A stretch of 64,000 nucleotides of DNA from NCBI RefSeq assembly GCF_000315625.1, contig NW_005434621.1:201398-265397 (forward strand). The letters are read 5' to 3'. Position 1 is the stretch's first letter. Every line of letters begins with the position of its first letter. Made by a program: the position numbers and the translations under genes. This DNA comes from Guillardia theta CCMP2712 (taxonomy: Eukaryota; Protista; Cryptophyta). Below are positions 7,189 through 16,859 of this stretch, in pieces. The notes beneath the pieces are model-generated. The model was not told the origin of the DNA, searched no databases, and was given only the letters and a program-made list of their open reading frames with translations.

Positions 7189-10100
7189 ATGGCAGCTGTG
7201 TATGTGGCTACCCGGAAGGGACGAATAAGGGGGAAGAAAGCGGCTTCCATCCCTACCATTCAGTTTCCTTCCGAAGAAGACAGCATCCTCATCGCAGAGC
7301 TTCACCGGCAAGTCCTCAGGTATTCTTGTCCTCCTCTCCCTTTCAATCCCGTGACTGTGCAATGCCGCGACAGCACCATCGGAGACACATGGCAGCGCAG
7401 GAAAGTTTGTCTGAGCAAGGACAAGCTTCTGCTCGGAAAAGTCGGAGCGATGGACGTGATTGACTACATACCGCTGGATGAGGTCATGGCCGTCGTGTCC
7501 AAGACAGCTCCATCAGAACAAACAGAAGACAAGTCCCATAACCAAGGAGAGAAGAGGGCCAGCATCAAGCGATCGACAACTCTGAGGATAGACGACGTGA
7601 GTCTGCCGCGAGAGCCTCTCTCTACGTCCGCTGTTTGATCATGAGCACAGGACGAGCTGGACGAGAAGATCTTCATCATCACGACCATACCCGAGGGACA
7701 CAACTCGGGCAAGTCGACAGTGCTGCTGGCATCGAGCAAGGATGAGCGAGACACTTGGGTATGGAGCATGATGGTGGAGAGGAGCTAAAGGTGTGTGTTT
7801 GAACAGATCACAGCTATCCACCAAGCTGTCAAAGTCTATCTCAAGGAAAAGCTACGGCAAGGAGAAACGAAGCTAGAGAGGCGACAGAGGCAGCTGAGAA
7901 GAATCTACTCGAGCACAGCAAGTCAGCTCTTCTTCTCGGCTGTGATCATGGCGTCTTTCATTTGCGCCATCCTGTCGGCGCAGCTGCAGCCTCCAGACGG
8001 CTCGCAACAAGCGAGAGCGTTCAGAGCCTTGGAAATAACCTACACGTGCATCTTCGCATTTGTACGTACAGCAGGTGAAGCGAGGGGTCGCTGACGAGGG
8101 AGGTAGGAGCTGGTAGTCAACGTGCTGAGCAACTGGTACTGGCCGTTCGTATCGGACGGGTGGAACATCCTCGGTGAGGAGGGACGAGGGTCTGGGGAGT
8201 CATCTGACATTGTAGGGGCGACGCGCATGGGGATGCAGACTTCGTGGTCGTGATGATAACTGTTCTTTCGGAGATCATCCAAGGGGTGCCTGGGCTGAGC
8301 GCGCTACGTCTGATTCGTATCTTCAAGATGATACGAGTGTTCAGGTGGGGAGAGATAGAGTAGCAGGAGCAATGCGAGGGAGAGAGCAAGAGAGGGAGAG
8401 AGAGGGAGGGAGATGGGGGAAGAGACGGGCGTAGGTAGGGGCGCAGATGTGACAAGAGGGACGAGGATAGCGACTGACTTGGAATGCGGCGGGACAGGAT
8501 GCTCAACTCGTTCCGCGTGCTGATCAACGCCCTGTCGTCTTCGGGTAGGAAGGGAGCAGGCGGGCATGAGAGGAGAGAGCTGACGAGGGGACGCAGTCAT
8601 TCCTGTGCTGAACGCGTTCTGCATCTTGCTTATCTTCACGTCGATCTTCGCGATCATCGGGACGAACGTGTTTGCTGGGAGGAGCGAGGACTTCTTCGGG
8701 AACTTTTTGAAGTCGATGTTCACCCTCTTTCAAATGGCAACGGGAGACTCCTGGGCGTCTGCAGTGACGCGGTCGCTGTTTACTGAAGATGAACACTCCA
8801 ACTTCTGGGCAAGTGGAGGTCGGGGAGAAGGGAAGGGAGGGAGCTAAGCTTTTGTGCGGACAGACGGCGATGTACTTTGTGGTCTACATGCTCATCGTCA
8901 ACGTGGTGAGGAGAAAAGACTAGAGACCATGGCGAGGAGTGAGCAAGAGAGCCCAGGTGCTGATGAACATCGTGGTGGCTGTACTGCTGGACGAGTTCAT
9001 CTCGACGGTCGAGCGAGAGCGCAGCGAGAAGAAGGCCAGGAACGAGGAGACCCTCGTGAGACATGATCGCCCTACATGAAGGGAATAGGAGAGACTGAGA
9101 CTTGCTGTGCTGTACAGATCGGACTCGTGAGGGAGTTTCACGCAAGAGGCCCGCTGGACCCACTGGTGACAAGCCTGATGGACTTCTCGACGCTGGAGGA
9201 GCTGTCGTTGAAGATCTTCCAGCTCTATCAGGTCGCTCAAAAGCTCTCGAGCGTCTTGTGGGCTCGCGGACTCACACGTGTGGGAGCAGAAGATGGACCT
9301 GGACGAGTCCGGGTCAGTCAACCTCGAGGAGCTCAACTTCGGGCTCAAGGTAAAGCAGAGTAGAAGGAGCGAAGGACGTAGAGGAACGGAAGAGGAGGAG
9401 GAGGAGGAGGAGGAGGAGGAGGTAGACGCTGACAGGCGGGTACATCAGAAGCTCAAGCTGAGCCCTCCCGTGACGCTGACGGAGGAGGATTGGGACGCGA
9501 TCACGGACTCCCGGAAGCTGCTGAACTCGCAGGAGGAGCTGGGGCCAGAAGAGTTCGAGACGATGATCCTGACGCAGATGTCGAACTATGTGCATCGCAA
9601 GGTAGAGGGAGGGGAGGGAGAGGAGAGGGGGAGAGGGGAGGGGACGGGGAGAAGGAGGGGAGGTGAGAAGAAGGGGCTAACGGAAGGCGAAGGTTGCTAC
9701 GGCGATCAAGAACGAGGCGCAGGAGTTCAACTACGACGTCCTGTTTGCAATCAAGTCGCTGCTATTCTCAGTGGACAAGATAGACAACCCGATCTTCAAG
9801 TCGAAGAAACAGACTCCACGGAAGTCGAAGAGGGAGATCTTGAAGAAGCTCTTCAACTCTCCTGTTCACAACGCTTTCTCGCACTGGAAGTCGACTGTGA
9901 CAATTGCAAACTCTTTGCCAGAGACGAAGTATGCGAATCTGGAGGAGATTCACGTTTGCATTCAAAGAATGGAATCTACTCTGAGCAAGATCGTCTCGGA
10001 TCCTTCCCCAGGTAGACCCCAGGACCTTCACATCCTCCGACTCACCGACGCCGTGGAGAAGATACAGTCGTCCATGTCGCGGCACGACGACACCTTGAGA

Positions 10101-11092
10101 AGGATAGAGGAGAAGATGTCTCGGATGGAGAGGCACGGGAGCGAAGGGCCCAAGCGGCCGCATGGAGGAGCGAACGGGGGAGGGCAACGAGGAGAGGAGG
10201 GGCAGTCGCAGGTGGGGACGATGCTGGGGTCAGACATCATCGTGGTAGGGAAGGGCAAGCAGGAGGAGCGAGAGGAGGTCAAGCTCCAGAGCTTGTCTCA
10301 GCTGACAGCCAAGAAGAAGATGGGGAGGATGCAGAAAGTTCACTCGATGCCGATCCATTCAGAAACCCCGAAACACGAGAAGCTCAACGGGAGCAGCTCA
10401 GCCGTCTACCCCGGACCCTCGCAAGCTTCGCCGCAGTCCTCCAAGAGACTTGACAAGTTCCTTCCCAACGGGGACCCTCCCGACGGAGATCGCCCGAGGC
10501 TTCCGGCCGAGACGTGCAGGGGCAAGGGAGACTACGTGAAGCTGTCATGGTTCGAGCTGCCGGTCAACTTCGACTCGCTGCGATCGTCGAGCATCTTGCG
10601 GCGGGAGCNNNNNNNNNNNNNNNNNNNNNNNNNNNNNNNNNNNNNNNNNNNNNNNNNNNNNNNNNNNNNNNNNNNNNNNNNNNNNNNNNNNNNNNNNNNN
10701 NNNNNNNNNNNNNNNNNNNNNNNNNNNNNNNNNNNNNNNNNNNNNNNNNNNNNNNNNNNNNNNNNNNNNNNNNNNNAGGAGGAGGGGGGGCTGGCGGTAG
10801 AGCGATCGTCGTACGTGGACGTGCACTCGCGGGACGGGACGGGCTACAGCCGCTTCTTCCAAGCGAGGTAGGAGAGAGAGGGAGGGAGAGGGAGGAGAGG
10901 GGACTGATGAGGAGGCGCAGGAGGGAGGGAGAGCAGGCGACAGGGGCGATGGGGAAGACTTTGACGGGGAAGTACGTAGGGGGGAAGCTGAGGGTAGAGG
11001 AGGAGGGGGGGGAGGTGCGAGAGGTGGAGCTAGACAGGAGCATTCATCAGGCGATCAGCAAGATCCGCGTGCTGAGGTTTGAGAGACAATGA
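7189..11092 (+). CDS. Single-domain (6TM) voltage-gated cation channel with N-terminal PH domain and C-terminal EF-hand, copy A
   Basis: PH: WQRRKVCLSKDKLLL...IDYIPLDEV...IFIITT...ASSKDERDTW|ITAI. S1-S3: QLFFSAVIMASF, ELVVNV...DGWNIL|DFVVV. S4: ALRLIRIFKMIRVFR. S5: VIPVLNAFCILLIFTSIFAIIG. Pore: FTLFQMATGDSWAS. S6: VLMNIVVAVLLDEF. EF-hand: DLDESGSVNLEEL. The true start may lie upstream (about 7007). N gap at 10609-10776. Confidence 0.88.
10609..10776. other. Assembly gap (168 N) within channel copy A
   Basis: N run; the matching segment of copy B is 13030-13197, also 168 nt. Confidence 0.95.
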
Positions 11093-12720: not shown

Positions 12721-15700
12721 TCAGAATTGATATCTCAGCACGCGGATCTTGCTGATCGCCTGATGAATGCTCCTGTCTAGCTCCACCTCTCGCACCTCCC
12801 CCCCCTCCTCCTCTACCCTCAGCTTCCCCCCTACGTACTTCCCCGTCAAAGTCTTCCCCATCGCCCCTGTCGCCTGCTCTCCCTCCCTCCTGCGCCTCCT
12901 CATCAGTCCCCTCTCCTCCCTCTCCCTCCCTCTCCTACCTCGCTTGGAAGAAGCGGCTGTAGCCCGTCCCGTCCCGCGAGTGCACGTCCACGTACGACGA
13001 TCGCTCTACCGCCAGCCCCCCCTCCTCCTTGCACAGCTGCTCCACCGCTCTGCCCATCCTCTCCGTCTCCGTCGACCCCTCCCCGTCCTCCCCGAGACCC
13101 GCCGAGAAGCACTCTCGCGCCACCCCGTCCTCCCCGACCTTGAGGTACACGTGGTACGTGTCGTAGAGCAGCACCTTGACGCTCTCCGCCCTCGCCTGCT
13201 CCCGCCGCAAGATGCTCGACGATCGCAGCGAGTCGAAGTTGACCGGCAGCTCGAACCATGACAGCTTCACGTAGTCTCCCTTGCCCCTGCACGTCTCGGC
13301 CGGAAGCCTCGGGCGATCTCCGTCGGGAGGGTCCCCGTTGGGAAGGAACTTGTCAAGTCTCTTGGAGGACTGCGGCGAAGCTTGCGAGGGTCCGGGGTAG
13401 ACGGCTGAGCTGCTCCCGTTGAGCTCCTTGTCCTTTCTGGGCGAGAAGTAAGGAAACGAGAGGTTTTTGTGTCTAAAAACAGATCTGCTTGACGCCCGAC
13501 GCTCACTGAGACTCTGGAGCTTGACCTCCTCTCGCTCCTCCTGCTTGCCCTTCCCTACCACGATGATGTCTGACCCCAGCATCGTCCCCACCGGCGACTG
13601 CCCCTCCTCTCCTCGTTGCCCTCCCCCGTTCGCTCCTCCATGCGGCCGCTTGGGCCCTTCGCTCCCGTGCCTCTCCATCCGAGACATCTTCTCCTCTATC
13701 CTTCTCAAGGTGTCGTCGTGCCGCGACATGGACGACTGTATCTTCTCCACGGCGTCGGTGAGCCGGAGGATGTGAAGGTCCTGGGGTCTACCTGGGGAAG
13801 GATCCGAGACGATCTTGCTCAAGACAGCTTCGATTCTTTCCATGTTGACATTAAGAGTCTCGAGGCTAACGGCTTTAGTTTGGCGAAACGAGCTGGGCAA
13901 CCCCATCTCATGCTTCCAGTGCGAGAAAGCGTTGTAAACAGGCGAGTTGAAGAGCTTCTTCAAGATCTCCCTCTTCGACTTCCGTGGAGTCTGTTTCTTC
14001 GACTTGAAGATCGGGTTGTCTATCTTGTCCACTGAGAATAGCAGCGACTTGATTGCAAACAGGACGTCGTAGTTGAACTCCTGCGCCTCGTTCTTGATCG
14101 CCGTAGCAACCTTCGCCTCCCGTTAGCCCCTTCTTCTTCTCCCCTCCCCTCCTTCTCCCCGTCCCCCCCCCCCTCCCCCTCTCCTCTCCCTCCCCTCCCT
14201 CTACCTTGCGATGCACATAGTTCGACATCTGCGTCAGGATCATCGTCTCGAACTCTTCTGGCCCCAGCTCCTCCTGCGAGTTCAGCAGCTTCCGGGAGTC
14301 CGTGATCGCGTCCCAATCCTCCTCCGTCAGCGTCACGGGAGGGCTCAGCTTGAGCTTCTGATGTACCCGCCTGTCAGCGTCTACCTCCTCCTCCTCCTCC
14401 TCCTTCTCGTTCTCGTTCTCGTTCTTTACACGTCGTCTGCTGCTTTCTGTCTCTATTTCGATCCCTATCCTACCTCCCTCCTGTTGTCTTCTTCCTTCAC
14501 TTGCTCATCTAGCATGTCTCCCTGCTTCCCTCATGGTTGACTTCCCCCCTGCCCCTGCCCCTGCCCCTGCCCCTGCCCCTGCCCCTGCTCCTGCCTCTGC
14601 CTCTTCTGTTCCTCTACGTCCTTCGCTCCTTCTACGCTGCTTTACCTTGAGCCCGAAGTTGAGCTCCTCGAGGTTGACTGACCCGGACTCGTCCAGGTCC
14701 ATCTTCTGCTCCCACACGTGTGAGTCTGCGAGCCCACAAGACGCTCGAGAGCTTTTGAGCGACCTGATAGAGCTGGAAGATCTTCAACGACAGCTCCTCC
14801 AGCGTCGAGAAGTCCATCAGGCTTGTCACCAGCGGGTCCAGCGGGCCTGAGCCACGGAACGACTTGACGAGTCCGATCTGTACAGCACAGCAAGTCTCAA
14901 TCCCTCCTCTTTTTATCAACAAGACTTACAATGTCCTCTTGACGCTTTGCTTTCTTCTCGCTGCGCTCTCGCTCGACCGTCGAGATGAACTCGTCCAGCA
15001 GTACAGCCACCACGATGTTCATCAGCACCTGGGATCTCTTGCTCACTCCTCGCCATGGTCTCTAGTCTTTTCTCCTCACCACGTTGACGATGAGAATATA
15101 GATCACGAAGTACATCGCAGTCTGTTCAGTGTGCAACAGCTTAGCTCCCTCCCCTCCTACTCTCTGCCCAGCTCGCTTCCTCCTCCCCTCATTACATTTG
15201 ACGTATTCTCACCCCTCCTTTTCTCCTCCACCTCCTCTTACCCAGAAGTTGATGCGGTCGTCGTCGATAAAGAGTGAACGTGCAATCGACGACGCCCAGG
15301 AGTCGCCAGTCGCTATTTGAAAGAGGGTGAACATCGACTTCAAAAAGTTCCCGAAGAAGTCCTCGCTCCTCCCAGCAAACACGTTCGTCCCGATGATCGC
15401 GAAGATCGACGTGAAGATAAGCAAGATGCAGAACGCGTTCAGCACAGGAATGACTGCGTCCCCTCGTCAGCTCTCTCCTCTCATGCCCGCCTGCTCCCTT
15501 CCTACCCGAAGACGACAGGGCGTTGATCAGCACGCGGAACGAGTTGAGCATCCTGTCCCGCCGCATTCCAAGTCAGTCGCTATCCTCGTCCTTCTTGTCA
15601 CATGTGCACCCCTACCTACGCCCGTCTCTTCCCCCATCTCCCTCCCTCTCTCTCCCTCTCTTGCTCTCTCCCTCGCATTGCTCCTGCTACTCTATCTCTC

Positions 15701-16859
15701 CCCACCTGAACACTCGTATCATCTTGAAGATACGAATCAGACGTAGCGCGCTCACACCAGGCACGCCTCGGATGATCTCCGAAAGAACAGTTATCATCAC
15801 GACCACGAAGTCTGCATCCCCATGCGCGTCGCCCCTACAATGTCAGATGACTCCCCAGACCCTCGTCCCTCCTCACCGAGGATGTTCCACCCATCCGATA
15901 CGAACGGCCAGTACCAGTTGCTCAGCACGTTGACTACCAGCTCCTACCTCCCTCGTCAGCGACCCCTCGCTTCACCTGCTGTACGTACAAATGCGAAGAT
16001 GCACGTGTAGGTTATTTCCAAGGCTCTGAACGCTCTCGCTTGTTGCGAGCCGTCTGGAGGCTGCAGCTGCGCCGACAAGATGGCGCAAATGAAAGACGCC
16101 ATGATCACAGCCGAGAAGAAGAGCTGACTTGCTGTGCTCGAGTAGATTCTTCTCAGCTGCCTCTGTCGCCTCTCTAGCTTCGTTTCTCCTTGCCGTAGCT
16201 TTTCCTTGAGATAGACTTTGACAGCTTGGTGGATAGCTGTGATCTGTTCAAACACACGCCTTTAGCTCCTCTCCACCATCATGCTCCATACCCAAGTGTC
16301 TCGCTCATCCTTGCTCGATGCCAGCAGCACTGTCGACTTGCCCGAGTTGTGTCCCTCGGGTATGGTCGTGATGATGAAGATCTTCTCGTCCAGCTCGTCC
16401 TGTGCTCATGATCAAACCAGCGGACGTAGAGAGAGGCTCTCGCGGCAGACTCACGTCGTCTATCCTCAGAGTTGTCGATCGCTTGATACTGGCCCTCTTC
16501 TCTTCTTGCCGGACGGTCTCGTCAATGTTTTCTTCTGTGCTTGTCTTGGACACGACGGCCATGACCTCATCCAGCGGTATGTAGTCAATCACGTCCATCG
16601 CTCCGACTTTTCCGAGCAGAAGCTTGTCCTTGCTCAGACAAACTTTCCTGCGCTGCCATGTGTCTCCGATGGTGCTGTCGCGGCATTGCACAGTCACGGG
16701 ATTGAAAGGGAGAGGAGGACAAGAATACCTGAGGACTTGCCGGTGAAGCTCTGCGATGAGGATGCTGTCGTCTTCGGAAGGAAACTGAATGGTAGGGATG
16801 GAAGCCTCTTCCTTCCCCCTTATTCTTCCCTTCCGGGTAGCCACATACACAGCTGCCAT
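12721..16859 (-). CDS. Single-domain voltage-gated cation channel with PH and EF-hand domains, copy B (inverted paralog)
   Basis: Reverse-complement near-copy of 7188-11077 with the same exon structure. Pore FTLFQIATGDSWASS; C-terminus ...VLRYQF*. Confidence 0.88.

What the first reader, a model, noticed from the sequence alone, without database searches (positions are those of the whole stretch)
7189..11092. PH domain fused to a bacterial-Nav-like single-domain voltage-gated channel with EF-hand and TGDSW filter
Seen: one polypeptide with a PH domain, one 6TM unit (S4 RLIRIFKMIRVFR), filter TGDSWAS, an EF-hand (DLDESGSVNLEE) and a long tail. Established: single-domain Nav/Cav-like channels (bacterial NaChBac/NavAb, CatSper, algal EukCat) carry TxE/DxW filters, and the characterised ones I know of lack a PH domain. 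Inference: a channel integrating voltage, phosphoinositide or small-GTPase binding (PH) and Ca2+ (EF-hand). Asp in place of Glu at the filter may favour Ca2+ or non-selective conduction.
Basis: partly seen in the sequence, partly recalled or inferred. Interest (0 to 1): 0.75.

Follow-up and report, generated by a model that had tools for sequence, protein, structure and literature searches.

The report
PH-domain-bearing single-domain voltage-gated cation channel
This is a real 15-exon gene of the cryptophyte alga Guillardia theta: a bacterial-style one-domain voltage-gated cation channel with a pleckstrin-homology (PH) domain joined to its front end, and it is one of about forty such genes in this genome and of a large protist family that I found described in no paper.

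Summary
Window 7189-11092 (+) is one 15-exon gene, 987 codons with the gap counted as 56. The public model is GUITHDRAFT_111617 / EKX42342.1 of Guillardia theta CCMP2712.

It encodes, in order:
- a hydrophobic-then-basic N-terminal peptide;
- a PH domain;
- one 6TM voltage-gated unit (S4 RLIRIFKMIRVFR, filter TGDSWAS);
- one canonical EF-hand loop with a degenerate partner;
- a heptad segment and a long tail.

The fusion does not depend on splicing, because exon 4 alone encodes both the PH C-terminal helix and S1-S2.

The 168-N gap matches exactly 168 in-frame, stop-free bases in the inverted paralog and in an environmental contig. Public DNA contigs bridge it with 168 letters.

The PH fold is supported by family profiles, Pfam hits above threshold in relatives, and AlphaFold models (VIA Z about 10-11 to GRK2, IRS-1 and Akt PH).

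The closest solved channel is NavEh (EukCatB) of Emiliania huxleyi. Its published Glu-to-Asp filter mutant, which gives this gene's filter type, passes Ca2+.

The design is not unique. About 41 loci in this genome show it, as do Hanusia phi and MMETSP transcripts and many environmental proteins. Automatic databases already hold the fusion, but I found no paper on it. Function is untested. The scan had noted this same stretch before.

The parts
7189..11092 (+). Whole coding region of copy A. The 15 exons are 7189-7319, 7374-7596, 7651-7758, 7807-8061, 8107-8173, 8239-8344, 8498-8544, 8597-8808, 8864-8905, 8957-9055, 9118-9231, 9290-9349, 9449-9601, 9693-10867 and 10921-11092.
   Evidence: The frame is kept across all junctions with canonical splice sites. 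The public model P0263 (GUITHDRAFT_111617) has the same start and stop. The junctions agree with homologs and with the public models of paralogs P0225 and P0264.
7189..7239 (+). N-terminal peptide MAAVYVATRKGRIRGKK: small or hydrophobic residues at 2-8, then a basic run from residue 9.
   Evidence: The pattern is conserved in four paralogs that are only about 50% identical in this exon. It matches the published description of the NavEh inactivation N-helix, with hydrophobic turns followed by Arg9-Arg13. Its function here is inferred.
7258..7869 (+). PH domain, residues about 24-175, spread over exons 1-4. The helix Trp is at 7756-7758 and the beta2 motif W-x-x-R is W50/R53.
   Evidence: Family PH profile E 3e-34. 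Pfam PH 23.9 bits on P0263. The family profile finds only PH domains in the PDB. AF2 models of relatives give 7 strands plus a helix, with VIA Z 10-11 to PH domains.
7807..8061 (+). Exon 4, the fusion exon: end of the PH C-terminal helix, the linker, S1 and the start of S2 in one uninterrupted exon.
   Evidence: Translation. The same arrangement lies in single open frames in paralogs L019, L021 and L023.
7921..8498 (+). Voltage-sensor domain S1-S4. S4 is RLIRIFKMIRVFR with five R/K at every third position. S2 has F..E and S3 has WNILD.
   Evidence: The family consensus keeps WNxFD and LRLxRxxR.
8526..9004 (+). Pore module: S5, P1 helix, filter TGDSW (8740-8754), P2 helix and S6.
   Evidence: Pfam Ion_trans 30.7 bits on exon 8. 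PDB matches to NaChBac, NavAb and NavEh. The model of relative P0096 shows two pore helices.
8809..8863 (+). Intron 8, a GC-AG intron with donor GCAAGT.
   Evidence: It is needed to keep the P2 helix and S6 in frame. The same intron position has a GT donor in copy B and in the environmental ORF P0001. The public model skips 15 conserved codons here instead.
9190..9589 (+). EF-hand-like C-terminal domain: a canonical loop DLDESGSVNLEE (9296-9331) plus a degenerate second hand, preceded by the conserved GPLDPL motif (9148-9165).
   Evidence: PS00018 pattern match. EF-hand_5 scores 17 bits on exon 12. The equivalent position in Hanusia P0040 hits EF-hand_1 at E 8e-8. NavEh has an EF-hand-like domain in the same place.
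10020..10136 (+). Heptad-repeat (coiled-coil-like) segment in the tail, residues 649-687.
   Evidence: A crude heptad scan found 7 of 8 a/d positions hydrophobic. This is inference only. BacNav and EukCat channels carry a C-terminal coiled coil.
10609..10776 (.). Assembly gap (168 N) inside exon 14.
   Evidence: The matching stretch is exactly 168 nt and open in frame in copy B (window:13028-13198:-) and in L025. DNA contigs of runs X2 and X3 bridge it with 168 letters.
12721..16859 (-). Inverted, tail-to-tail paralog (copy B) with the same 15-exon design and no gap.
   Evidence: It has 86 amino-acid differences from copy A, clustered in islands.

Best explanation
Shown:
- The stretch is one intact gene of Guillardia theta CCMP2712 (GUITHDRAFT_111617).
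- Its product is a single-domain voltage-gated cation-channel subunit of the NavEh/EukCatB-BacNav type.
- A PH domain sits directly before S1, joined to it by a helical linker that lies in the same exon as S1.
- An EF-hand-like domain follows S6, then a tail.
- The gene belongs to a large clade in which the PH domain is a constant part of the channel.

Inferred:
- Four subunits form a depolarisation-activated pore. Because the filter is TGDSW (Asp, not Glu), it probably passes Ca2+ as well as Na+.
- The four cytosolic PH domains dock on anionic inner-leaflet lipids, most likely phosphoinositides, through the conserved beta1/beta2 basic residues (R40, R53). Because they are tied by a helix to S1, they make gating or availability depend on membrane lipid state.
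- The EF-hand domain gives Ca2+ feedback.
- The heptad segment helps tetramer assembly.
- The conserved hydrophobic-plus-basic N-terminus may act as an N-type inactivation plug, as in NavEh, or as a second lipid anchor.
For: Gene and fusion:
- The exon model is coherent.
- Exon 4 carries both the PH helix and S1-S2.
- Paralogs have PH plus S1-S2 in single open frames.
- The public model P0263 is one polypeptide with the same start and stop.
- P0225 matches G000:C35 at 100%, which names the genome.

PH domain:
- Pfam PH scores 23.9 bits on P0263. Relatives score above the cut-off: P0220, P0223, P0232, P0233 and P0270 at 26-29 bits, and P0052 at 54.6 bits.
- The A1 profile finds only PH domains in the PDB, led by PLEKHA6 at 8e-6, then PLEKHA7, pleckstrin, cytohesin and TAPP1.
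- The AF2 models have pLDDT 82 and 87. All 50 top Foldseek hits have the PH superfold (PH, PTB or FERM-F3), and VIA Z is 10-11 at rmsd 1.8-2.7 A.
- The Arg/Lys at W+3 of beta2 is kept in 19 of 25 family representatives, and in this gene too.

Channel:
- Ion_trans hits.
- The nearest structures are NavEh (8j7m, 7x5v), then NavAb and CavAb.
- The E305D mutant of EhEUKCATB1, with filter TGDSWSE, conducts Ca2+ and Ba2+.

Family:
- In the tree, a 56-row group holds 33 PH-bearing rows, 22 N-terminally truncated rows and 1 row without PH. It is separate from the PH-less group that holds the NavEh-like P0212.
- The family includes Hanusia phi and MMETSP transcript-derived members.
- About 41 of about 53 PH-family loci in this genome have a channel match just downstream on the same strand.
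Against: - There is no RNA evidence for this particular copy. The one RNA run laid gave 0 reads and is no test.
- The 168 bases in the gap are unread in copy A.
- Pfam PH on this gene's own sequence is just below the curated cut-off.
- The structures were predicted for relatives (P0040, P0096), not for this protein.
- Lipid binding, ion selectivity, voltage dependence and tetramer formation are all untested.
- The residue at W+1 of beta2 is Gln, not Lys/Arg, so the classical K-Xn-(K/R)-X-R phosphoinositide motif is only partly present.
- The branch that supports the PH clade is moderate (SH-aLRT 82, quick tree, no bacterial outgroup).
Confidence: 0.6

Rival explanations
1. The architecture is as described, but the PH domain is a protein-binding or targeting module, not a lipid sensor of gating. 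It might bind G-beta-gamma as the GRK2 PH does, a small GTPase, or a scaffold that sends the channel to flagellar or ejectosome membranes.
For: The best structural matches include the GRK2 PH, IRS-1 PTB and FERM F3 domains, which bind proteins. The classical phosphoinositide motif is incomplete, with Gln at W+1. The variable beta-strand loop (residues 89-102) is one of the fastest-changing islands between the two copies, as a partner-recognition surface might be.
Against: By sequence profile the nearest PH domains are lipid binders: PLEKHA6/7, cytohesin/GRP1, TAPP1 and pleckstrin. The key beta2 Arg is conserved in 76% of the family representatives. No partner is known.
Confidence: 0.22
2. The PH domain is mainly structural: a cytosolic assembly or coupling module under the voltage sensor, comparable to the T1 domain of Kv channels or the PAS/HCN domains of the CNBD channels, with no ligand of its own.
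For: It sits directly before S1, joined by a predicted 26-residue helix and a pre-S1 helix. It is a constant feature of the clade. Sub-lineages insert EF-hand pairs into it, so it tolerates use as a scaffold.
Against: Conserved basic residues lie at the canonical lipid-binding strands. A heptad segment already exists in the tail for assembly.
Confidence: 0.1
3. Copy A is a non-functional duplicate or partly an assembly artefact of the inverted pair. Only copy B or other paralogs would then make protein.
For: There is an assembly gap inside exon 14. Read contigs that mix A-type and B-type islands show that assemblers confuse the copies. One intron donor is GC rather than GT. No RNA evidence exists for copy A.
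Against: No stop or frameshift occurs in 931 readable codons. pN/pS against copy B is 0.54, with the differences clustered in a few islands rather than spread as in decay. A read contig matches copy A without any difference over 754 bases that include an A-specific island. GCAAGT is the usual consensus of functional GC-AG introns (own knowledge).
Confidence: 0.06
4. The PH exons and the channel exons belong to two neighbouring genes.
For: None found. It was only conceivable before exon 4 was read.
Against: Exon 4 encodes the PH helix and S1-S2 together. Single open frames with PH plus S1-S2 occur in paralogs. Transcript-derived proteins of Hanusia phi and MMETSP carry both parts. The public model is one protein.
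Confidence: 0.01

Closest known systems
NavEh = EhEUKCATB1 of Emiliania huxleyi (EukCatB; PDB 7X5V, 8J7M; PMC9114117; bioRxiv 10.1101/2020.04.29.068528)
   Same: It is a single-domain eukaryotic voltage-gated channel. It is the best structural match of the family model (Foldseek E 1e-10 to 1e-9). It has a T-G-x-S-W filter and an EF-hand-like domain after S6. Its N-terminus is hydrophobic residues followed by a basic cluster starting at residue 9.
   Different: NavEh has no PH domain. Its filter has Glu (TGESWSE, Na+-selective) where this gene has Asp. It has a tall extracellular S5-P1 loop, whereas here the loop is short. In my tree the NavEh-like sequence P0212 falls in the PH-less sister group.
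EukCatA of diatoms (PtEUKCATA1, OsEUKCATA1; PMC6509283)
   Same: It is a single-domain 6TM channel of algae with red-alga-derived plastids. Asp at filter position 0 occurs in some members. It is permeable to both Na+ and Ca2+ and has a C-terminal coiled coil.
   Different: It is a different clade with different filter motifs (for example TLDAWAD), and no PH domain or EF-hand is reported.
Bacterial NaChBac / NavAb / CavAb (BacNav)
   Same: It has the same 6TM fold with two pore helices. The filter T-x-[ED]-S-W-A-S is nearly identical to the TLESWAS of NaChBac. It is a homotetramer with a C-terminal coiled coil.
   Different: It is bacterial, about 270 residues, and has no cytosolic N-terminal domain and no EF-hand.
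Four-domain Cav/Nav (best sequence match: T-type Cav3.1 domain IV)
   Same: The channel core of the family scores highest against single repeats of T-type Cav (E 4e-43 for P0040). An EF-hand-like domain follows the last S6.
   Different: Those are four linked repeats in one chain, whereas here there is one repeat per chain. They have no PH domain.
Classical phosphoinositide-binding PH domains (PLEKHA6/7, cytohesin/GRP1, TAPP1, Akt1, pleckstrin)
   Same: Seven-strand sandwich plus a C-terminal helix with the conserved Trp. A basic residue at the end of beta1 and an Arg at W+3 of beta2. Profile and structure matches.
   Different: Sequence identity is only 12-20%. The beta1-beta2 motif is incomplete. 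The long variable loop lies between the fourth/fifth and sixth strands. None of these domains is part of an ion channel.
Kv channels whose N-type inactivation is switched off by PIP2 binding to the ball peptide (Oliver et al. 2004, from memory, not checked here)
   Same: This is a functional analogy only: a basic N-terminal plug whose availability could depend on inner-leaflet phosphoinositides.
   Different: It is a different channel family with no PH domain. The analogy is a hypothesis, not a finding.

Membership tests
Voltage-gated ion channel superfamily, single-domain 6TM type (Pfam Ion_trans PF00520) | Pfam Ion_trans at or above the gathering score | tested here: met
   30.7 bits on exon 8 alone (cut-off 25). 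93.6 bits on the public model P0263.
Voltage-gated ion channel superfamily, single-domain 6TM type (Pfam Ion_trans PF00520) | S4 with at least four basic residues at every third position, plus acidic or aromatic counter-residues in S2 and S3 | tested here: met
   RLIRIFKMIRVFR has five such residues. S2 is ...FAFELVV... and S3 is WNILDF.
Voltage-gated ion channel superfamily, single-domain 6TM type (Pfam Ion_trans PF00520) | One repeat per polypeptide, with a T-x-[ED]-x-W pore loop between two pore helices | tested here: met
   There is a single Ion_trans stretch with filter TGDSW. The two pore helices are seen in the AF2 model of relative P0096, not modelled for this protein itself.
EukCatB sensu Helliwell (NavEh-type) | Groups with the haptophyte EukCatB sequences in a phylogeny | tested here: inconclusive
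   NavEh is the nearest solved structure. However, the NavEh-like P0212 sits in a PH-less group beside, not inside, the PH clade (SH-aLRT 82-92, quick tree, no bacterial outgroup). The papers place unnamed cryptophyte sequences in clade B, and their lists could not be read.
EukCatB sensu Helliwell (NavEh-type) | Filter TGESW with Glu at position 0 (Na+ selectivity) | tested here: not met
   This gene has TGDSW. Asp also dominates among the 150 closest relatives, and only four sequences among the proteins held at that point (168) have TGESW.
EukCatB sensu Helliwell (NavEh-type) | EF-hand-like domain after S6 | tested here: met
   A canonical loop at residues 471-482. Homologs hit EF-hand_1 at the same position.
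PH domain (Pfam PF00169) | Pfam PH at or above the gathering score (25.1 bits) | tested here: not met
   23.9 bits, E 6e-5, on P0263, whose retained intron 1 disturbs beta1-beta2. The score is met in relatives: P0220 26.4, P0232 27.9, P0233 27.9, P0223 28.9, P0270 26.9 and P0052 54.6 bits. Failing by 1.2 bits lowers formal membership, not the fold assignment.
PH domain (Pfam PF00169) | Seven-strand beta sandwich capped by a C-terminal helix with a conserved Trp | tested here: met
   The AF2 model of P0096:18-425 has 7 strands plus helix 137-162. The P0040 model reaches VIA Z 10-11 against PH domains. This gene's exons align along the whole family profile (E 3e-34), with Trp154 in the helix. 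This was shown on relatives, and the joined protein of this gene was not folded.
PH domain (Pfam PF00169) | Phosphoinositide-binding signature K-Xn-(K/R)-X-R in beta1-beta2 | tested here: inconclusive
   R40 in beta1 and R53 at W+3 are present, but W+1 is Gln. R/K at W+3 occurs in 19 of 25 family representatives. Binding itself cannot be tested here.
EF-hand (PROSITE PS00018 / Pfam EF-hand_1) | Canonical 12-residue Ca2+-binding loop | tested here: met
   DLDESGSVNLEE(L) fits the pattern at every position. The Pfam score is only 17 bits on the 20-residue exon. The second hand is degenerate.
CatSper | Weakly charged S4, T-x-D-x-W filter, heteromeric sperm-specific complex | not tested
   No CatSper chain appears among the listed PDB sequence matches or the top 50 fold matches. 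Helliwell et al. place the EukCats apart from CatSper.

The most novel reading that the evidence does not exclude
The PH-bearing clade would be a distinct, undescribed class of voltage-gated Ca2+-permeable channels. In this class a built-in phosphoinositide sensor, rigidly linked to S1, sets whether the channel can open or whether its N-terminal plug can inactivate it. One subunit would then detect the coincidence of voltage, membrane lipid state and Ca2+. With about forty paralogs, these channels would be the main fast Ca2+ entry route of cryptophytes, for example downstream of their channelrhodopsins in flagellar or ejectosome responses.
Probability: 0.25. Interest if true: 0.8.

Novelty: new variant of a known kind. 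Interest (0 to 1): 0.6.

Why it matters
Many voltage-gated channels depend on phosphoinositides, but the lipid binds to the channel body. A dedicated lipid-binding domain fused to the voltage sensor has not been characterised in any of them, as far as the papers I could search show.

Here such a fusion is conserved across a large protist clade and expanded to about forty genes in one alga. That argues for an important and selectable function.

The close relatives EukCatA and EukCatB/NavEh express well in HEK293 cells and have given cryo-EM structures, so the idea can be tested directly.

The work also corrects four errors in the public gene model. It gives cryptophyte biology, including work on its channelrhodopsin-driven behaviour, candidate voltage-gated Ca2+ channels.

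Tried and rejected
- RNA evidence. The only RNA raw-read run (X6) laid 0 reads from about 6% of the run, under a different organism label, so it is no test. X7 matched only 18-base scraps.
- Exon-by-exon Pfam. This was too weak for the PH domain (PH_4 E 0.015 on exon 3 only). I had to go through paralogs and public protein ids.
- Joined model. The joined spliced protein of this gene was never sent to any search or folding tool. It was built only inside local scripts for translation, hydropathy, patterns, a local HMM scan, a tree and pN/pS. So there is no structure prediction of this exact protein.
- Big protein search with exon 8. It did not return this gene's own model. The third word search did.
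- Supplementary lists of the two EukCat papers are not held. I could not check whether these very genes are the authors' cryptophyte EukCatBs.
- Literature searches. Searches for pleckstrin/PH together with EukCat, Guillardia, cryptophyte or voltage-gated channel terms, and for the accession numbers, found nothing relevant.
- Exon versus intron conservation. This fails as a test of the model because introns are as conserved as exons between the copies.
- No complex prediction was run, because no binding claim is made.


Full report
**Gap first.**
The finding holds 168 N at 10609-10776. Three independent comparisons show that the two sides are continuous and in frame.
- The window carries an inverted, tail-to-tail paralog (copy B, minus strand 12721-16859) that is colinear with the finding. 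The flanking repeat arms end at 13198 and 13029, so the stretch of copy B that matches the gap is exactly 168 nt. It reads as 57 open codons in the frame of exon 14 (window:13028-13198:-).
- An environmental contig that carries a third version of the gene (L025, ENA ERZ930071, 90-94% identical) also has exactly 168 nt between the matching flanks, again open in frame.
- Logan contigs of two public DNA runs bridge the gap with 'same length'. One of them matches copy A without a single difference over 754 bases that include an A-specific island.

The letters of copy A in the gap remain unread. Read contigs can be chimeric between the two copies: one mixes an A-type and a B-type island. I therefore rate continuity as very likely, not proven.

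**Gene model.**
- From the ATG at 7189 to the TGA at 11090-11092, the + strand reads as 15 exons and 14 introns of 45-153 nt.
- Thirteen introns are GT-AG. Intron 8 has the donor GCAAGT.
- Most introns have a CTGAC/CTAAC-like branch site shortly before the acceptor.
- The product has 987 codons if the gap is counted as 56.
- The joined protein was assembled only inside local scripts. To the search and folding tools I sent exons by reference, or public protein ids. No structure prediction of the exact joined sequence was made.

**Organism and public model.**
- The window is G000:C53:201398-265397 of an 87.1-Mb assembly.
- A named protein of Guillardia theta CCMP2712 (GUITHDRAFT_108723, P0225) matches contig C35 of that assembly at 100%.
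- The public model of the finding itself is P0263 = GUITHDRAFT_111617 / EKX42342.1 / XP_005829322.1 / UniRef100_L1J229, 887 aa, named 'EF-hand domain-containing protein'.
- It uses the same start and stop and is one polypeptide, so the fusion is also what the genome project predicted.

The public model differs from mine at four places, and at each one the homologs favour my version:
- It keeps the in-frame intron 1, an 18-residue insert in the beta1-beta2 loop. The public model of the C60 paralog (P0264) and all relatives lack this insert.
- It replaces the conserved S3 motif WNILD by an odd splice.
- It avoids the GC donor and so deletes 15 residues of the P2 helix. The family consensus keeps these residues.
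- It splices around the assembly gap.

**The fusion does not depend on splicing.**
- Exon 4 (7807-8061) encodes the end of the PH C-terminal helix, a basic linker, S1 and the start of S2.
- In more distant paralogs of the same genome, the PH domain from beta2 onward and S1-S2 lie in a single open frame (L019, L021, L023). Pfam sees PH (E 4e-4) and Ion_trans in one such frame.

**Is the N-terminal domain a PH domain?**
- Taken exon by exon, Pfam is nearly blind: PH_4 at E 0.015 on exon 3.
- On the public model P0263, PF00169 scores 23.9 bits (E 6e-5, profile 15-104 of 105) against a cut-off of 25.1, and PH_4 scores 21.8 bits.
- Relatives pass the cut-off: P0220 26.4, P0232 27.9, P0233 27.9, P0223 28.9, G. 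theta P0270 26.9 and P0052 54.6 bits. Each has Ion_trans in the same chain.
- A profile of the family's N-terminal domains (alignment A1), searched against all PDB sequences, finds only PH domains. The order is PLEKHA6 (8e-6), PLEKHA7, pleckstrin, cytohesin-2/3, TAPP1, GRP1 and Akt.
- AlphaFold2 on the Hanusia phi relative P0040:60-195 gives pLDDT 82. All 50 best Foldseek matches are PH, PTB or FERM-F3 domains. VIA-align gives Z 10-11 at rmsd 1.8-2.7 A over 85-94 residues against the GRK2, IRS-1 and Akt1 PH domains.
- A second model, P0096:18-425 (pLDDT 87), shows seven strands, a 26-residue C-terminal helix, a short pre-S1 helix, then S1-S6 with two pore helices.
- A family PH profile built without any window sequence matches the spliced product of this gene over residues 24-175, E 3e-34, running through three exon junctions (local script).

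I conclude that it is a genuine, diverged PH domain.

**Lipid-binding residues.**
- The beta2 motif W-x-x-R is kept. R/K at W+3 occurs in 19 of 25 family representatives and in this gene as R53. By motif alignment this is the position of Akt1 R25, Btk R28 and GRP1 R284 (own knowledge).
- A basic residue ends beta1 (R40).
- W+1 is Gln, so the classical signature is incomplete.
- Phosphoinositide binding is therefore plausible, not shown.

**The channel.**
- Hydropathy gives six membrane segments.
- S4 has five R/K at every third position. S2 and S3 carry the usual Phe/Glu and Asp.
- The pore loop reads FQMATGDSWAS, close to the TLESWAS of NaChBac.
- Exon 8 alone passes Pfam Ion_trans (30.7 bits). 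Its best PDB sequence matches are NaChBac, NavAb and the Emiliania huxleyi channel NavEh.
- The family model's best fold matches are NavEh (8j7m, 7x5v), then NavAb, CavAb and NavMs.
- NavEh is EhEUKCATB1, the characterised EukCatB. It is Na+-selective with filter TGESWSE. Its E305D mutant (TGDSWSE) conducts Ca2+ and Ba2+.
- This gene carries that Asp naturally. So do most of the 150 closest cluster representatives, where [ST]GD[SAG]W dominates and TGESW is rare.
- A channel permeable to Ca2+ as well as Na+ is therefore the likeliest reading, by inference from the mutant and from the diatom EukCatAs.

**After S6.**
- A conserved GPLDPL motif is followed by an EF-hand. Its loop DLDESGSVNLEE fits PS00018 at every position.
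- The second hand is degenerate.
- Pfam scores are weak on this gene (17 bits). The same position in Hanusia P0040 hits EF-hand_1 at E 8e-8, and NavEh has an EF-hand-like domain in the same place.
- The start of the tail is conserved in relatives (P0018, P0095).
- A crude heptad scan marks residues 649-687 as coiled-coil-like. This would fit the C-terminal coiled coil of BacNav and EukCat channels.
- The rest of the tail hits no Pfam family.

**How widespread is the design?**
- In the tree of channel cores, this gene sits in a starred group of 10 rows. That group lies within a group of 56 rows: 33 carry the family PH domain, 22 are N-terminally truncated fragments, and only one lacks it.
- The neighbouring group of 22 rows, which holds the NavEh-like P0212, has no PH domain.
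- Members with names come from Hanusia phi (EukProt entries P0028, P0038, P0040, P0151, P0155, P0244, P0267) and from an MMETSP transcript (P0197). The rest are metagenomic or metatranscriptomic.
- ESM Atlas holds clusters of 219 and 65 eukaryotic Ion_trans proteins in which 12-17% of members pass Pfam PH.
- Within G. theta, the family PH profile finds about 53 loci. At about 41 of them a channel match lies just downstream on the same strand. I compared by hand, and because the lists are truncated this is a lower bound.

**Literature.**
- The two EukCat papers place cryptophyte sequences in clade B. The methods I read (bioRxiv 2020) say hits were inspected for voltage-sensor, ion-transport and EF-hand signatures. 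Neither paper contains 'pleckstrin'.
- No paper in the library combines pleckstrin/PH with EukCat, Guillardia, cryptophyte or voltage-gated channel terms in a relevant way, or cites the accession numbers.
- The fusion therefore exists in automatic annotation. UniRef names the C60 paralog 'PH domain-containing protein'. As far as I can see it has not been described or studied.

**Mechanism.**
Shown:
- One gene.
- The order: N-terminal peptide, PH, helical linker, S1-S6, EF-hand-like domain, tail.
- An intact voltage sensor and an Asp filter.
- Family-wide conservation of the PH domain.

Inferred:
- A homotetrameric, depolarisation-activated, Ca2+-permeable cation channel.
- Its PH domains dock on anionic inner-leaflet lipids and, through the helix into S1, couple gating or availability to lipid state.
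- The EF-hand domain provides Ca2+ feedback.

The N-terminus (small or hydrophobic residues 2-8, basic from residue 9) is conserved in four paralogs that are otherwise about 50% identical in this exon. It matches the published description of the NavEh inactivation plug. It could equally be a polybasic lipid anchor.

**Verdict.**
This is a new, large variant (a PH-bearing clade) of a known kind of channel, and its function is untested. The scan had already noted this same stretch in other readings. I found no note of it on other DNA.

Noticed in passing
window 7189-11092 (+) versus 12721-16859 (-): The two inverted copies are a mosaic. Introns are 94.8% identical, yet 86 amino-acid differences cluster in a few islands: residues 89-102 (PH loop), 368-380 (after the filter), 425-440 (after S6), 606-635 and 742-769 (tail). 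Overall pN/pS is 0.54. This looks like gene conversion with local diversification. It was already noted by other readers of this scan.
   Followed up: partly
L025 and L026 (ENA ERZ930071 / ERZ930064, PRJEB17505): Metagenome contigs carry a third version of this gene, 90-94% identical to both copies and with the same exon-intron layout. A close Guillardia relative or strain was therefore present in that sample.
   Followed up: partly
G000:C35:443686-446741 (-), loci L016, L018, L027: The public model GUITHDRAFT_108723 (P0225) starts inside the PH domain. Upstream exons encoding the conserved N-terminal peptide and PH strands beta1-beta4 lie at C35:446405-446741, so that model is N-terminally truncated.
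   Followed up: partly
proteins P0004, P0033, P0048, P0052, P0158, P0159: A sub-lineage of the family has an EF-hand pair inserted between the first and second halves of the PH domain, giving a split PH. P0052 hits Pfam PH at 54.6 bits on the first half only, followed by EF-hands and then the channel.
   Followed up: partly
proteins P0183 and P0198 (NCBI MGB1605709.1, MGB1597082.1): Two members of these eukaryotic channel clusters are deposited as 'MAG: ion transporter, partial [Promethearchaeia archaeon]'. They are at least 90% identical to members of the PH-channel clusters. This is probably eukaryotic contamination of archaeal bins.
   Followed up: no
whole genome G000: Pfam Ion_trans finds more than 150 matches in the G. 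theta genome, including several multi-repeat loci (for example C32:380701-386709, C55:29525-34147, C25:325634-329932). This is a very large voltage-gated-type channel repertoire for a unicellular alga.
   Followed up: no
window 9380-9434 and other introns (for example 8345-8497, 9602-9692, 10868-10920): The introns of this gene are strikingly purine-rich (GGAGG/GAGGGA runs, and a (GAG)n run at 9393-9425). This gives the + strand a strong GC skew over 8-10 kb.
   Followed up: no
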